Shown piece by piece: positions 34,916 through 45,559 of a DNA stretch of 64,000 nucleotides. Source of the stretch: Octopus sinensis (taxonomy: Eukaryota). Where the stretch lies: the NCBI RefSeq assembly GCF_006345805.1, contig NC_043002.1:58094001-58158000 (forward strand), read 5' to 3'. The translations under genes were made by a program, and so were the position numbers. Positions within the stretch are counted from its first letter, which is position 1. Each line of letters starts with the position of its first letter. Under the pieces are notes generated by a model that did no database searches, was not told the DNA's origin, and saw only the letters and a program-made list of their open reading frames with translations.

Positions 34916-37900
34916 GTTATATATATATATGTATGCATGTATGTATGTAACAGATTGGAAAGTTATACATCCTCAAACACTTGTATATTTACATTTAGAT
35001 GGATTAGTAGACAGAAGGAAGCCATCGATAATTATGCTAATTATTAAAATGATGATTAAAGACTGATAAAAATGTGAGATCAAATCACTTTTCTTTCTTA
35101 CCCGAAATTCGGATATTGCTCCTCAGATGACCAGATACATTTGATACAATTTGTACTAAGATCAGTTATTTACTTCTTCCTACAAATATTAGCCATTTGG
35201 TGTAATCATTAATGATTAAAGTGTTTGGAAATATGCTGAATTTGAGTGGACAAGAACAGATTTAGTTCCAAAGTCCTGGTTACTGAAATTTAGCATCTTA
35301 CTTCAGGGGCTGAGTGAAATGTTTCAGGATTGAGTGAAAGGAGTAGTAACACCAGTCACTTCATTGCCATTGGTGTGGACGCTATTAACAGCAACGCTCT
35401 CAGAAAGCATTTCCGAGCATCTTGACAACCAGAATTTGTTGCAAGAAGGAAATATTCATGAAAAATTTGTTTCCAACCTTACAAAATCCTTTAGATGAAT
35501 ACCTACTCAAAATGTCTAATGATGTCGAAAGTCACTCTCTTTCTTCTTCACATCACAACTAAAAGAGTTTTCACCAATGAAATTAAAAACCTGTTGAGTA
35601 GATAGAAGGAGGACATCGATTATGATGCTAATTATAAAAAAGATTATTAAAGTTTTATAAATATGATATTAAACCACTTTTCTTTCTTACTCAAAATTCG
35701 GATATTACTTATGGGATGAAGAGATACATCTGCTAGTTTGGTATGAGGTCAGTTATTTCCATTCTACTACATATAGTTATGTTCTTTGTCATGTTCGCTC
35801 GATATTGGACAACCGAGCATATAGATAATCTGACTATATTCATTTGAGTATCTTTCTACAAAACGAGTAATAGTGTAGGAGTGGAAGTGGAACAAGTAAG
35901 TGCTGCTTTATTGTTGGTGGGGTACAGGACATTATTGTCATCCCTTCTCCAATAGACGTACTTGGAGAGGTTTTGGATTTGATAACTCAGAACATCTGTT
36001 TATTATTGTTATTGAGTTGCATTGACATCAAAGTTTGGCTGTTTATTGGCACCCGATCTCTCTATATATTCATACAGGACTTACAGCCAAATAAATGGTG
36101 TAGAAGAAAGTACTGAAAGGGAGAAAACCCACTGACGAAGCTAGAGAGTTGTGGAGTAGTATTTGATATAATCCAGTTAAACATAATGGAGATGCTGCAT
36201 AGTTAAAGAAACTAAAGGATGAGGTTGTTAGTGGGAAACAGCCAGATCTAAAACTACATAGGTCATTAACGAGTAAAGTGTAAGGAAATTAGGAACAGAT
36301 TTAGTTTAAAGGTTCTGGTTAAAGGAATTTAGTATTTTACTTCAGGGACTGAGGGAGGAATTTCAGTTTTGAAGGAATGGAGTAGTTATACCACCTTGGA
36401 TGTTTTAGAGGGAGAACAGTACTCGTTATTGAAGGCAAATGCAAGGCTAATGTAGCTAGTAGTTACATATCAGTCACTTGATTACAATCAGTGTGGAAGC
36501 TGTTAGCAGGGATGCTTTCAGAAAGCATTTCCGAGCATCTTGACAACTGGAGAATTGCTGCAATAAAAACCGAAATGTAGCAGGATAATGATATTTAAGA
36601 AAAAGTTTTTTTCCGAAGCTTCCAGGATGCTTAAGATAAATTAGTACTCAAAAGGAGCATGGGTATCGGACGTGACCTCACTTTCTTCACATGAAAACCA
36701 AAAGGGATTTTTTTAAATGAAATTGAAAATCTGATCAGTAAATACAGGCAAGTCATGAGCAATGATGCTAATTATTAAGAGGATGATTAAAGTTTAATAA
36801 AATGTGAGATTAAATCAATTTCCTTTCTCAACCATAATTCGAATATTGTTTATTAGATGACCTGACACATTTACAACAGATTGGGTTAAGGTCAGTTATT
36901 TACATCTTCCTACAAATTCTAGTCCCATGGTGTATTCCCTCGATAATGGCCAAACAGTCATATATAATCCGACCATATTCATTTGCGTTTCCTTCCAAAA
37001 AACTAGTAATTGTGCTGTTGGTTTAATCCAATTTCTCCTTTTTACCCTGCAGGTGTGCAGGTGACTCAAGTAAGCGTTGCATTATTGTTGGTGGGGTGGA
37101 GGACATTATTGTCTTCTTTTCTCCAAAAGACGTATGCAGTCATGTTTTCTATTTGATAATTCAGAACATTCTGTTTATTATTGCGCTGGTGATGAGTTGC
37201 ATTGACATCAAATCTGTTTACTTGTTTATTGCCTGCCAATCTCTCTAGAAGATCTATCAGGTTTTACAGCCAAATAAATAGTGTAGAAGAAAGTACCGAA
37301 GTTGAGAGAACTTAATTCAGAAGAAACCAGAGAGTTGTGGAGTAATAATGGAGATGCAGCATGATTAAATAAAGTGAGGGAAGAAGTTATCAGTGGGAAG
37401 CAGCCGAATCTAAAAGTAAATAGTTCATTAATGAGTAAAGTGTCATGAAAATATTCTGAATTAGATGGGCCAGGAACAGATTTACCTCAAAGGTTCTGGT
37501 TCCAGATTTTCAGTATCTTACATGAGGGCCTGCGGCAAAAATTTCAGGATTGATTGAACAGAGTAGTAATTCAAGCTTCGATGATTAAATGGAGAGCAGT
37601 ATTCCTTATTGAAGACAAATGCAAACTAATATAGATAGTAATTATGGATGAGTTACTTCATTGCCATTGGTTTGGAAGCTATTAAACAGCAATGCTCTCA
37701 AAGATCATTTACGAGCACCTTGACAACCACAAGTTGTTGCAACACGACGAAAATCCAACATAATGATATTCATGAAAACTTTGTTTCCAAGCTTACAACA
37801 TCCATTAGATGAATTAGAACTCAAAAGGACCAAGCATGTCGAAAATGACCTCACTTTCTTCATTGACATCACAACTAAAACAGTTTTCACCAATGAAATT

Positions 37901-39168
37901 AAAATCCTGTTGGGTAGATGGAAGAAGGACATCGATTATAGTGCTTCTTATAAAAAAGACGATTAAAATTTGATAAAATATGAGATTAAATCACTTCTTT
38001 TCTTACCTAAAATTCTCATATTGCTTATAGGATGACATGATAGATTTGCTTGTTTGGTATAAGGTCAGTTATTTCCCATCTTCTACATAAATTTAGGTTC
38101 TTTGTTATATTCGCTCGATATTGGCCAGACAGTCATATATAATCTGATCATATTCATTTGAGTATCTTTCCACAAAACTAGTTATAGTACAGTTGGCTTA
38201 TGGCATTCTCTCATCTTTAAATTTGCAGTTGGAGTGGAGGTGGTCACAATAATCGTTGCAATATTGTTAGTGGTGTGGAGGACATAATTGTCTTCATTTC
38301 TCCAACAGACATTTGAGGTCGTTTTTTGTTTTTGATAACTAAGATCATGTGTTTATTATTACGCTGGTGTTGCGTTTCATTTACATCAAATCTGTGGTTA
38401 GGATACCTCATAAAGTTTAGTTTTTCTTGTGTGTCAAACTCTCTATATGTTCATTCAGGTTTTACATCCAAATAAATGGTGGAGAAGAAAGTACTAAAGA
38501 TGAGAAAACTTAATGCAGAAGAAGCTAGAGAGTTGTGAAGTAATATTTGGGATAAGCCAGTAAATCATAATAGAGTTGCAGAATGGTTAAAGAACTGAGG
38601 GAAGAAGTTGTCAGTTGGAAGCAGCCAGTTCTAAAACTAAATAGATCATTAATGAGCAAAGTTTTAGGAAATATGCTGAATTAGATGGTCCAGGAAGTGA
38701 TTTAGTTCAAACGTTCTGATTACAGAAAGTTTGTACCTTACTTCAGGGACTGAGGGAATAATTACAAGATCCAATGTATGGACTAGTAATAATGGATGAT
38801 TAGAGGGGAATCACTGCTTTTTATTTAAGACAAATGCAAAGCTAATATTGCTAGTAATTATAGATTAGTCATGCGCTTACTAACAGTGTGGAAGCAGCTA
38901 GCAGCAATAATCACAGAAAACATTTACGAGTACCTTCACAACCAGAATCTGCTGCAAGAAGAAAAGAAATGGTGCAAGATAAAAATATTCATGAAACATT
39001 TGTTACGAAGCTTACAGAATCCTTTAGATGAATTAGTACTGAAAAGGCACGAGCTTGTGGAAAGTGACCTCAATTTCTTCTTCACATCACAACTAAAAGA
39101 TTTTTCAAAAACAAAATTAAAATTCTGGTTAGTAGACAGCAGGAAGACATCGATAACGATACTAATTA

Positions 39169-44700: not shown

Positions 44701-45559
44701 TAATGCTAATTGTAAAAAGGATGATTAAAGTTTTATGAAATGTGATATCAAATCACTTTCCTTTCTTTGCCAAAATTCGGATATTACTTATGGCATGACC
44801 TCATAAATGTGCTAGTTTGGTATAAGGTCCATTCTTTCCTATTTTTACATGCAGTGAAGCTCATTGATTGATATTGGCTAGTGGAGCCTATATATTCTGA
44901 CCGTATTCATTTGAGCTTCTTTCCACAAAGCTAGTCATAGTGCTTTTGGTATTTTCTTATGGTATTGGCTTATGGTATTTTCCCATCGTTAACCTTGCAG
45001 TAGGTGTAGAGGTGACCTCAGTAAGCGTTGCATTATTGTTGAGGGAGTGGAGCACATTATTATCTTCCTTTTTCCAATAGATGTATTTGGTCGAGTTTTC
45101 TATTTGATAACTGAAAACATGCTTAATATTGCGCTGGTGTTGAGTGACACTGACATCAAATCCGTGAACAGGAAAATGGTCTGTTATTCCTGCCAACCTC
45201 TCTATATGTCCATGCAGGTTTTATAGCCAAAGATATGGTGTAGAAGTTGAGAAAACCTAATTCAGAAAATGCTTGAAAGCTTTGGAATAATATTTGGTAT
45301 ATGCAAGTCAATCATAATGGAGGTACAGCATGGTTAAATAAAGTAACTGGAGAAGTAATATTGAAAACCAACACTTTTCTCTTTCGTTCCCAAGATTTGG
45401 ATTTTACTTATGTTATAACGTGATACATTTGCTAGTTTTCTATAAGGTCCTTTTAAGATATTCTTTTATTATCCTTTTCATGTTTCAGTCATTTTGAATG
45501 TGGCCATTCAGATTGCAGAGATGAAGGCTGAAAATTGAGTAAGAAATTTTGTTAGTAGC

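What the first reader, a model, noticed from the sequence alone, without database searches (positions are those of the whole stretch)
35040..45450. Macrosatellite built from a three-transposon chimera (R4/Dong, mariner, antisense Penelope)
Seen: about 10 tandem ~1.15-kb units with the same junctions. Each has an R4/Dong RT N-terminal fragment (e.g. ARELWSNIW.KPVNHN..AEWLK...KANIASNYR...VWKLL...EHLDNQNLLQEE, homologous to bases 330-480 of this window). This is fused to a mariner C-terminus (KHFFRRLQNALD...SQPKEFF...RWKEVIDNHGNY) and a right-end motif (..GATGACCTGATA). A ~170-bp spacer and a minus-strand PLE GIY-YIG tail (NKQINFKIFPVHKF...) follow. Neighbouring units are strongly diverged (roughly 20-30 percent by eye). 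Inference: a nested insertion formed once and was amplified long ago. The R4 3' end at 45560-46215 may be the tail of the host element. A function such as a piRNA/endo-siRNA source against three TE classes, or a heterochromatin seed, is speculation.
Basis: partly seen in the sequence, partly recalled or inferred. Interest (0 to 1): 0.8.

Follow-up and report, generated by a model that had tools for sequence, protein, structure and literature searches.

The report
Old tandem array of transposon fragments
A 1.2-kb stretch stitched together from dead pieces of two, probably three, different transposons was copied head-to-tail about eight times long ago and has since decayed evenly, which makes it a clean but ordinary example of satellite-like DNA born from transposon debris.

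Summary
Window 35003-45450 is a head-to-tail array with a 1,223-bp consensus unit. It has 4 complete units, one with an internal deletion, and about 8 partial or rearranged pieces (about 8 unit-equivalents). A 644-bp foreign insert interrupts it.

All units share the same internal junctions, so one composite founder was amplified. Units are 74-89% identical (mean 78%).

- Part 1 is firmly the region just N-terminal to the RT domain of an R2-like (restriction-like-endonuclease) LINE.
- Part 2 is the last ~60 codons plus the right inverted repeat of a mariner.
- Part 3, the minus-strand "Penelope tail", is only modestly supported (~40 codons, 11-16 bits).

The C-terminal remainder of the host LINE lies just right of the array (45501-46157) and ends in a microsatellite.

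A second copy, 94-99.6% identical, lies at 54280-64000.

No sub-segment is more conserved than chance, and every coding remnant is broken. The best reading is neutral decay of a locally amplified nested-transposon remnant. This kind is already described as "composite satellite monomers from TE graveyards". A small-RNA or heterochromatin role is untested.

The parts
35003..45450 (.). Array copy 1: about 8 unit-equivalents of a 1,223-bp composite unit (4 complete units, 1 with an internal deletion, about 8 partial or rearranged pieces)
   Evidence: nhmmer map; self-blastn; pairwise identity 0.74-0.89
54280..64000 (.). Array copy 2, the segmental-duplicate copy of 35263-43764. It runs off the window end. 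Substitution identity to copy 1 is 0.94-0.98 on the left and 0.98-0.996 on the right.
37217..38402 (+). Reference complete unit (consensus positions 12-1222)
   Evidence: coordinate map
37265..37753 (+). Fragment of an R2-like (R4/Dong-type) LINE, in the reference unit. It covers ~160 codons just N-terminal to the RVT_1 domain, from AEEARELW to LLQEEKK(G)C (the EQKGC motif). It carries frameshifts and stops.
   Evidence: Consensus peptide aligns 3-158 with P0070 80-231, 78 bits; tblastx to window 273-557(-); tblastn limits at consensus 106-573
37768..38058 (+). Mariner 3' end in the reference unit: the last ~60 codons of the transposase, the 3' UTR and the right inverted repeat, ending ...GATGACCTGA followed by TA
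   Evidence: Frame-corrected peptide hits the extreme C-terminus of SETMAR/Hsmar1, E 0.0011; shares ATTACTTATT at the same distance from the end as the window's own mariner; junction alignment
38059..38325 (.). The first ~25 nt are also found after the mariner end of the terminal partial unit. The rest may be the Penelope 3' UTR (inference only).
   Evidence: No protein or Rfam match.
38326..38461 (-). Probable C-terminal ~44 codons of a Penelope-like GIY-YIG endonuclease. It is 5'-truncated and abuts the LINE fragment of the next unit.
   Evidence: Ancestral peptide scores 16.3 / 10.9 bits on PLE profile positions 195-231; 0 and 2 of 5,000 shuffles reach these scores. A stop recurs in several units close to where the PLE ORF ends.
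40404..40625 (-). Best-preserved copy of the putative Penelope tail (73-aa ORF containing NKQINFKIFPVHKF)
   Evidence: 15.8 bits on the PLE profile
39886..40107 (+). 73-aa ORF that reads through the LINE-to-mariner junction (…EHLDNQNLLQEENECC|NIIFLKHFFRRLQNALD…)
39171..39815 (.). Non-array insert inside the array. Its counterpart in copy 2 is 58388-59714, enlarged by an 874-bp internal duplication.
45181..45450 (+). Terminal partial unit (consensus 18-206, then 807-889 across an internal deletion), ending with the mariner right end and its flank
45501..46157 (+). C-terminal 222-231 codons (CCHC motif and restriction-like endonuclease) of an R2-like/R4-Dong-type LINE. This is the likely 3' remainder of the host element. 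It is degenerate, with internal stops.
   Evidence: tblastn: P0110 391-620 of 622, E 1e-31; window RLE ORF, E 7e-26; tblastx
46200..46338 (+). (AAT)n/(GAT)n/(AAG)n microsatellite at the 3' end of the LINE remainder
   Evidence: TRF row 46244-46338; sequence
34179..34926 (-). Context: a separate Penelope-like element fragment (linker plus GIY-YIG) just left of the array. It lies inside a 3.3-kb block (31617-34920) that is absent from duplicate copy 2.

Best explanation
This is a degenerate, TE-derived composite tandem repeat with no indication of present function.

Inferred founder. An R2-like (R4/Dong-type) LINE sat with its 3' end in a microsatellite. It had been 5'-truncated next to the 5'-truncated end of an oppositely oriented Penelope-like element. 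A mariner had landed in or beside it. One deletion then joined the LINE at its EQKGC motif to the last ~60 codons of the mariner transposase.

Amplification. A ~1.2-kb slice of this scrambled remnant was duplicated once by illegitimate recombination. The slice ran from the Penelope 3' part, through the LINE 5' part and the mariner 3' end, to a few tens of bp of flank. Unequal crossing-over or replication slippage then expanded it to roughly 8-10 copies.

Later history. The copies decayed neutrally to ~78% pairwise identity. They suffered internal deletions and one foreign insertion. Much later the array was carried along in a ~20-kb duplication.

Shown versus inferred. Shown: the array, the shared junctions, the identity of the LINE and mariner parts, the adjacent LINE 3' remainder, the uniform divergence and the duplication. 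Inferred: the order of events, which junction is the amplification junction, the recombination mechanism and the Penelope assignment.
For: - Array and map.
- Identical junction columns in all units.
- LINE fragment: 78-bit end-to-end match to the region upstream of RVT_1 in homologues of the window's own element. That element hits R2 proteins in the PDB with E 1.6e-19 (RT) and 7e-5 (CCHC/RLE).
- Mariner: hit to the SETMAR C-terminus at E 1e-3, aligned to the very end of the chain; ITR motif and TA.
- LINE C-terminal remainder directly after the last partial unit, ending in a microsatellite.
- Founder already dead: the consensus needs frameshifts and stops, and some stops recur at the same position in several units.
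- Uniform decay: per-segment identity 0.75-0.83. The best 80-bp window is no better than column-permuted data, p = 0.31. Unit-to-consensus divergence is 13%, with CpG sites diverging faster.
- The internal deletion junctions at 39171, 41450 and 43683 are shared by both duplicate copies, so they predate the duplication.
- The category is described in the literature: composite satDNA monomers from 'TE graveyards' (PMC12628747).
Against: - The Penelope part is only marginally supported, and ~265 bp of the unit is unassigned.
- The array's right breakpoint cannot be fixed. Beyond ~25 nt after the mariner end, similarity between the unit and the distal flank is not significant (p = 0.19).
- The LINE 5' pieces in the array and the 3' remainder do not overlap, so it cannot be shown that they come from one element.
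- The segment at consensus 1146-1223 is slightly more similar between units (0.83 versus 0.75-0.78), although this is not significant.
- Absence of function cannot be shown from sequence alone.
Confidence: 0.8

Rival explanations
1. The array is a working small-RNA source (a piRNA or endo-siRNA cluster) or a heterochromatin seed. It would be kept because it carries pieces of three transposon classes.
For: - The region is a dense mix of TE remnants on both strands, which is what piRNA clusters look like (general knowledge, also noted in PMC12628747).
- Copy 2 contains a 206-bp inverted array piece at 60662-60867 that could give double-stranded RNA.
- The array has persisted long enough to reach 22% divergence without being lost.
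Against: - No sub-segment is conserved above chance.
- Units are too diverged from one another, and 43% or less identical in protein to the LINE copy in this window, so they would target active elements poorly.
- The parts lie on opposite strands, so one transcript would be antisense to only some of them.
- No small-RNA or expression data can be consulted.
Confidence: 0.08
2. The 1.2-kb unit is, or was, a mobile composite non-autonomous element that occurs elsewhere in the genome and landed repeatedly or in tandem here, for example through site preference as in tandem TE dimers.
For: - TEs often form tandem dimers by double insertion, and these can expand (PMC5932611).
- Penelope-like elements are often found as partial tandems. 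Locus L001 shows tandem partial PLE copies.
Against: - The unit has no pair of transposon ends. It holds only one mariner end.
- Its LINE piece is a 5'/internal part without a 3' end.
- The LINE-to-mariner junction is internal on both sides.
- No copy of the unit lies outside the two arrays in this window.
- The LINE 3' remainder lies next to the array, which suggests the array arose in place.
- No external copies were found, but only metagenome collections could be scanned.
Confidence: 0.05
3. The second array, and the whole ~20-kb duplicate, is an assembly artefact: two haplotypes of one heterozygous locus placed in tandem. There would then be only one array.
For: - Copy-to-copy identity of 94-99.6% with many indels lies within the range of allelic divergence in highly heterozygous invertebrates.
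- False tandem duplication of haplotypes is a known assembly error (general knowledge).
Against: - The copies differ by kilobase-scale blocks: a 3.3-kb block only in copy 1, and an 847-bp x2.7 tandem plus an 874-bp duplication only in copy 2.
- Identity changes stepwise along the array.
- These fit a true, somewhat older duplication equally well. This rival does not affect the reality of array 1, whose units differ by 22%.
Confidence: 0.15

Closest known systems
Composite satellite-DNA monomers derived from 'TE graveyards' (review, DNA Research 2025, PMC12628747)
   Same: The monomer consists of successive stretches similar to different transposon types. The proposed origin is nested and truncated insertions, then decay, then tandemisation of a slice of the scrambled locus. 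That is exactly the history inferred here.
   Different: - The described examples have short, barely recognisable TE stretches. Here two parts are long enough to delimit to within ~20 bp.
- The array is small (about 8 units) and old.
- It still lies beside the remainder of the host LINE, so it looks like a birth site rather than a spread satellite.
Tandem TE dimers and their expansion (McGurk & Barbash 2018, PMC5932611)
   Same: Transposon sequence becomes tandem and can expand by unequal exchange.
   Different: Those tandems are whole or 5'-truncated copies of one TE, joined end to end by double insertion at a preferred site. Here the unit is a chimera of fragments of different TEs with internal-to-internal junctions, so double insertion does not explain it.
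Vertebrate macrosatellites such as human D4Z4 (general knowledge; D4Z4 is mentioned in PMC5932611)
   Same: Kilobase-scale units in head-to-tail arrays that contain retro-derived or repeat-derived sequence.
   Different: D4Z4-type arrays are homogenised (units nearly identical), vary in copy number, and carry an ORF or a chromatin function. Here units are 22% diverged, all ORFs are broken, and no function is indicated.
R2-like LINEs with a restriction-like endonuclease, which target microsatellites or rDNA; R4 and Dong are usually placed here (PMC4640811 abstract for the endonuclease class and its targets)
   Same: - The window's intact-looking relatives have an RT followed by CCHC and an RLE-like C-terminus.
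- Their best PDB hits are R2 proteins.
- They are flanked by (TAA/TTA)n.
- The array's LINE remainder ends in an AAT/AAG microsatellite.
   Different: Clade assignment to R4/Dong, rather than another RLE clade, was not tested against reference sequences. The array's copy is only a 5' fragment plus a separate 3' fragment.

Membership tests
TE-derived composite tandem repeat (satellite/macrosatellite) | Head-to-tail repeats of one unit, far beyond chance | tested here: met
   nhmmer E down to 1e-260 for 13 pieces per array
TE-derived composite tandem repeat (satellite/macrosatellite) | Monomer has successive stretches similar to different TE types, with the same junctions in all monomers | tested here: met
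   The LINE part, the mariner part and the junction columns are met. The third part is only modestly supported.
TE-derived composite tandem repeat (satellite/macrosatellite) | Large copy number, spread or homogenisation typical of a genome-wide satellite | not testable with these tools
   Only 64 kb are available. In the window there are two arrays of about 8 units each, and the units are not homogenised (0.78 identity).
R4/Dong clade of non-LTR retrotransposons | RT followed by a C-terminal CCHC motif and a PD-(D/E)XK restriction-like endonuclease, with no AP endonuclease | tested here: met
   - Window element: RVT_1 plus zf-RVT.
- Best PDB hits are R2 proteins for both the RT and the CCHC/RLE parts, and no LINE-1 ORF2p at E < 0.01.
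- The array-adjacent 3' fragment aligns to the same C-terminal domain.
- No Exo_endo_phos domain among 120 homologues, although many of those are partial.
R4/Dong clade of non-LTR retrotransposons | Groups with the R4/Dong reference RTs in a phylogeny, rather than with R2, NeSL, CRE, HERO or Utopia | not tested
The database hits carry no clade names.
R4/Dong clade of non-LTR retrotransposons | Insertion into a specific repeat (rDNA or a microsatellite) | tested here: inconclusive
   Elements are flanked by (TTA)n/(TAA)n, and the 3' remainder is flanked by (AAT)n/(AAG)n. However, microsatellites are everywhere in this window (96 TRF rows).
mariner (Tc1/mariner DNA transposons) | Transposase C-terminal region homologous to mariner transposases | tested here: met
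   The 65-aa frame-corrected peptide aligns with SETMAR/Hsmar1 residues 167-224 of 226, E 0.0011. The local alignment to the window's own mariner C-terminus scores 55 with BLOSUM62.
mariner (Tc1/mariner DNA transposons) | Terminal inverted repeat ending at a TA target duplication | tested here: met
   Only the right end is present...ATTACTTATTAGATGACCTGA then TA. The inner motif ATTACTTATT sits at the same distance from the end as in the 1,295-bp mariner at 28278-29572.
mariner (Tc1/mariner DNA transposons) | DD(34)D catalytic triad | not testable with these tools
   The fragment starts downstream of the catalytic residues.
Penelope-like elements (PLE) | RT and a C-terminal GIY-YIG endonuclease in one ORF | tested here: inconclusive
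   - Met for the separate flank fragment at 34179-34926: its long homologues (698-817 aa) carry RVT_1 plus GIY-YIG.
- For the array's own piece, only ~40 C-terminal codons align: 10.9-16.3 bits, with 0-2 of 5,000 shuffles as good.
- BLAST finds nothing.
Penelope-like elements (PLE) | Hammerhead ribozyme motif in the terminal repeat (general knowledge) | tested here: not met
   No Rfam hit at gathering score in the window, and none at E <= 1 in 33500-46500. The fragment may simply lack that part.
piRNA / endo-siRNA cluster | Production of small RNAs (24-32 nt, 1U bias, ping-pong signature) | not testable with these tools
   No expression data are available.
Tandem TE dimer by double insertion | Junction joins the natural end of one TE copy to the start of the next copy of the same TE | tested here: not met
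   The unit's junctions join internal points of different TEs. Only one natural TE end, the mariner right end, is present.

The most novel reading that the evidence does not exclude
The array, together with its duplicate and the inverted piece in copy 2, is a maintained small-RNA-producing or heterochromatin-nucleating locus. Its composite unit would act as a multi-family transposon 'trap', and the ~20-kb duplication would be a higher-order repeat of such a locus.
Probability: 0.06. Interest if true: 0.5.

Novelty: new member of a known kind. Interest (0 to 1): 0.25.

Why it matters
The value is illustrative rather than a discovery. A recent review called the origin of composite satellite monomers with similarity to several TEs an open question and proposed that scrambled TE remnants are tandemised. 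This locus shows that path with unusual clarity.

- The parts can be delimited.
- All copies share the founder's junctions.
- The array still lies beside the leftover 3' part of the host LINE.

It therefore looks like a satellite caught at its birthplace that never spread. It could serve as a worked example or as an annotation aid, because such arrays would otherwise be masked as many separate LINE, mariner and Penelope hits. It does not open a new biological question.

Tried and rejected
- Pfam and NCBIfam on the three fragment translations and on array ORFs gave no hits, because the fragments lie outside the modelled domains.
- A PDB search with the raw 153-aa array ORF gave nothing useful. 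It worked only after correcting one frameshift.
- The search for homologous proteins with the 65-aa mariner peptide found no candidate sharing three 5-mers, so one search was wasted.
- Exact-ORF look-ups to identify the organism or other copies found nothing on record. The organism remains unknown. The closest RT is 75% identical, in assembly GCA_024449705.1, for which a paper search found nothing.
- Rfam gave no hammerhead or other family, only microsatellite-driven weak miRNA-like hits. ARAGORN found no tRNA.
- The first PLE test, with a 3-sequence profile and a consensus peptide that had lost one codon, scored about 0 bits. It was redone with a 150-sequence profile and a corrected ancestral peptide.
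- Six-frame hmmsearch of long X-masked translations was insensitive and was abandoned.
- Rival reading tested and rejected: that the 'Penelope' region encodes LINE RT on the plus strand. The only match has E 0.045, two stops and 22% gaps.
- The attempt to extend unit/flank homology into the LINE 3' fragment was not significant (p = 0.19).
- Metagenome scans for the fusion ORF and for the most conserved 22-mer found nothing.
- No clean higher-order periodicity was seen among units. Only a few closer pairs exist, such as 36029/40712 at 0.89.

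
Full report

Tandem Repeats Finder cannot see periods above 500 bp. I therefore compared the region with the whole window by blastn and searched with one unit by nhmmer.

Window 35003-45450 is a head-to-tail array. A majority consensus of the units is 1,223 bp. 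Real complete units are 1,109-1,211 bp.

The array is less regular than '10 units with the same junctions':
- Complete units start at 36029, 37217, 41825 and 43962.
- Unit 35351 has an internal deletion.
- About eight further pieces are partial, joined across internal deletions. Examples are consensus 119 joined to 879 at 40712, 430 to 999 at 41450, and 796 to 938 at 43683.
- A 644-bp stretch at 39171-39815 is not array sequence.

In total there are about 8 unit-equivalents. Pairwise identity between units of the array is 0.74-0.89, mean 0.78, Jukes-Cantor distance 0.26.

**2.

The array is duplicated. Positions 35263-43764 match 54470-64000, where the window ends. Substitution identity is 0.94-0.98 in the left half and 0.98-0.996 in the right half.

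This is part of a ~20-22-kb head-to-tail duplication:
- 24651-25790 matches 46335-47416.
- 30291-31617 matches 50248-53537.
- The two arrays follow.

The copies differ by kilobase-scale blocks:
- A 3.3-kb block (31617-34920) is present only in copy 1.
- An 847-bp x2.7 tandem is present only in copy 2.
- An 874-bp duplication lies inside the array insert of copy 2.
- A 336-bp block with an inverted array piece is present only in copy 2.

The deletion junctions at 39171, 41450 and 43683 are shared by both copies. The array was therefore already rearranged when the duplication arose. I cannot exclude that the second copy is a falsely duplicated haplotype. That would need reads.

**3. One founder**

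I aligned all pieces on the consensus. The LINE-to-mariner junction and the mariner-end-to-flank junction fall in the same columns in every unit that covers them. The composite therefore existed before amplification.

The consensus itself can be read only with at least two frameshifts and several stops. Some stops recur at the same codon in several units. The founder was already dead DNA.

**4. Part 1: the LINE fragment (consensus ~60/106-575, plus strand)**

Pfam does not cover this region. The window itself holds two relatives on the minus strand, at 15-2380 and 18404-20557:
- The ORF at 19345-20457 has RVT_1 (E 3e-22).
- The ORF at 18525-19292 has zf-RVT.
- In the PDB these ORFs hit only R2 retrotransposon proteins, with E 1.6e-19 for the RT and E 7e-5 for the CCHC/endonuclease part.

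The element is therefore an R2-like LINE with a restriction-like endonuclease.

The array consensus matches the minus strand of 273-557 by tblastx. Against 120 database homologues of the window's RT, its 158-aa conceptual peptide aligns end to end with the stretch just before the RT domain (P0070 residues 80-231, 78 bits). The alignment stops at the conserved EQKGC motif.

'R4/Dong' is a reasonable label. RLE-type LINEs target rDNA and microsatellites (PMC4640811), and these copies are flanked by (TAA/TTA)n. I could not test clade membership against reference sequences.

**5. Part 2: the mariner end (consensus ~590-880, plus strand)**

After correcting one frameshift in unit 39815, a 65-aa peptide hits one family in the PDB. 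That family is the mariner-derived domain of SETMAR (Hsmar1). The alignment covers residues 167-224 of a 226-residue chain, the very C-terminus, at E 0.0011.

The DNA then runs to ...ATTACTTATTAGATGACCTGA followed by TA. The window's own 1,295-bp mariner (28278-29572, Transposase_1 at E 3e-23) has the same ATTACTTATT at the same distance from its end.

The fragment is therefore the last ~290 bp of a mariner with its right end intact. The LINE-to-mariner junction joins two internal points. It is a deletion or recombination junction, not an insertion junction.

**6. Part 3: the 'Penelope tail' (consensus 1146-1223 plus 1-57, minus strand)**

This is the weak part.

A separate fragment just left of the array (34179-34926, minus strand) is certainly a Penelope-like element:
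- Its 181-aa ORF has GIY-YIG homologues.
- A profile search of 1.84 billion proteins gave 4,885 hits.
- The long hits (698-817 aa) carry RVT_1 plus a C-terminal GIY-YIG domain.

The array's own piece is different:
- It is not seen by BLAST.
- It scored about 0 bits in a first test.
- I then rebuilt the ancestral peptide from all units: NLNEHIERLAGNKQLNFK[I/R]FPVHRFDVNATQHQRNNKQMFLVIK, followed by a stop.
- With a 150-sequence profile it scores 16.3 bits (I) or 10.9 bits (R) on positions 195-231 of 240. That is the last part of the endonuclease.
- Of 5,000 shuffles, 0 (I) and 2 (R) reached these scores.
- No hammerhead ribozyme is present.

I rate the assignment probable (about 0.7), not shown.

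About 265 bp (consensus 881-1145) remain unassigned. They would be the Penelope 3' UTR if the assignment is right. A rival reading, LINE RT on the plus strand of the same DNA, is unconvincing (E 0.045, two stops, 22% gaps).

**7. The flanks and the likely history**

The last partial unit ends with the mariner right end plus ~25 nt of the same flank as in the units. About 60 bp later, at 45501-46157, the plus strand encodes the C-terminal 222-231 residues (CCHC plus endonuclease) of the same LINE family. The alignment runs right to the protein's end (E 1e-31). An (AAT)n/(GAT)n/(AAG)n microsatellite follows.

Beyond those ~25 nt I could not show further homology between the unit and the distal flank (p = 0.19).

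The simplest history (inference) is:
- A LINE lay with its 3' end in a microsatellite.
- A Penelope-like fragment lay head-to-head at its truncated 5' side.
- A mariner was inside or beside it.
- A deletion fused the LINE at EQKGC to the mariner C-terminus.
- An illegitimate duplication copied the ~1.2-kb slice running from the Penelope 3' part to just past the mariner end.
- Unequal exchange expanded the duplicate.
- Long neutral decay followed, and then the ~20-kb duplication.

**8. Any sign of function?**

- Mean pairwise identity is 0.75-0.78 in six of seven segments and 0.83 in the 78-bp Penelope coding piece.
- In a sliding 80-bp window the maximum is 0.837. Column-permuted alignments reach that in 31% of trials.
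- Units differ from the consensus by 13%, with ts/tv 0.86 and faster change at CpG sites. The consensus is CpG-poor, with o/e 0.28.
- No RNA family or tRNA is present.

Small RNAs cannot be examined here.

**9. Comparison with what is known**

[quoted passage not shown] It proposes that they arise by tandemisation of scrambled remnants in 'TE graveyards' (PMC12628747). The present array fits that description and adds a clean, delimitable case that still lies beside the remainder of its host element.

It is not a double-insertion tandem dimer in the sense of McGurk and Barbash (PMC5932611), because the unit is not one TE joined end to end.

It differs from vertebrate macrosatellites such as D4Z4, because it is unhomogenised and non-coding.

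**10. Verdict**

- There are fewer intact units than stated.
- The array is duplicated.
- The third part is weakly supported.

The origin story is supported. The functional speculation is unsupported and untested. I file it as a new member of a known kind, with interest about 0.25.

I could not identify the organism or find copies elsewhere. The closest relatives of the TE proteins come from marine-invertebrate-type sources, such as a Pinctada GIY-YIG protein and an Oculina RT.

Noticed in passing
window 24651-64000: A head-to-tail duplication of ~20-22 kb. 24651-25790 matches 46335-47416, 30291-31617 matches 50248-53537, and the two arrays follow. Identity is 89-99.6%, with kilobase-scale differences between the copies. 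It could also be a falsely duplicated haplotype.
   Followed up: partly
window 15-2380 (-) and 18404-20557 (-): Two copies of an R2-like/Dong-type LINE. The second has open RT (370 aa) and CCHC/endonuclease (255 aa) ORFs. Each has a short tandem repeat at its 5' end (30 bp x3.7 at 2278-2382; 20 bp x6.1 at 20538-20659). The 20-bp repeat is made of the element's own coding sequence at the truncation point. Both repeats are followed by (ATT)n/(TTA)n, and (ATA)26 lies at the 3' end.
   Followed up: partly
window 28278-29572 (-): A near-complete 1,295-bp mariner with both inverted repeats (TACGAGGGACGTTCAATAAGTAATGCC) and a frameshifted transposase ORF (Transposase_1, E 3e-23).
   Followed up: partly
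window 31617-34920: A 3.3-kb block present only in duplicate copy 1. It contains a Penelope-like fragment (34179-34926, minus strand) and a ~300-bp tandem duplication (33573-34160). In copy 2 a (TATG)n microsatellite occupies the corresponding place.
   Followed up: partly
window 24692-25249 (+) and 46499-46816 (+): Further Penelope-like fragments at paralogous positions of the two duplicate copies (tblastn E 5e-28 and 2e-15).
   Followed up: no
window 47744-50006: An 847-bp unit repeated 2.7 times at 99% identity, strongly purine-rich on the plus strand (GC skew 0.29, AT skew 0.49). It is present only in duplicate copy 2, and its content is unidentified.
   Followed up: no
window 30411-30550 and 50367-50913: The same 46-bp minisatellite has 3 copies in duplicate copy 1 and 12 copies in copy 2.
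   Followed up: no
window 39171-39815 and 58388-59714: A foreign insert inside the array, without terminal inverted repeats. In copy 2 it is enlarged by an 874-bp internal duplication and carries a 137-aa ORF (58770-59183, MDCYFCNVNN...) with no Pfam or NCBIfam match. It is probably a fragment of another transposon.
   Followed up: partly
window 60611-60947: A 336-bp block present only in array copy 2. It includes a 206-bp array piece in inverted orientation (60662-60867), which could pair with neighbouring units if transcribed.
   Followed up: no
whole window: Very high microsatellite density: 96 TRF rows in 64 kb, mostly (TA)n, (ATAG)n, (TATG)n, (GT)n and (ATT)n. No tRNA or Rfam family is present, and no evident host gene. 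GC content is about 35%.
   Followed up: no
L001 4200-6800: The contig carrying the closest homologue of the Penelope-like flank ORF holds two tandem partial copies of that ORF (4529-5318 and 6088-6759). This illustrates the tendency of Penelope-like elements to occur as partial tandems.
   Followed up: no
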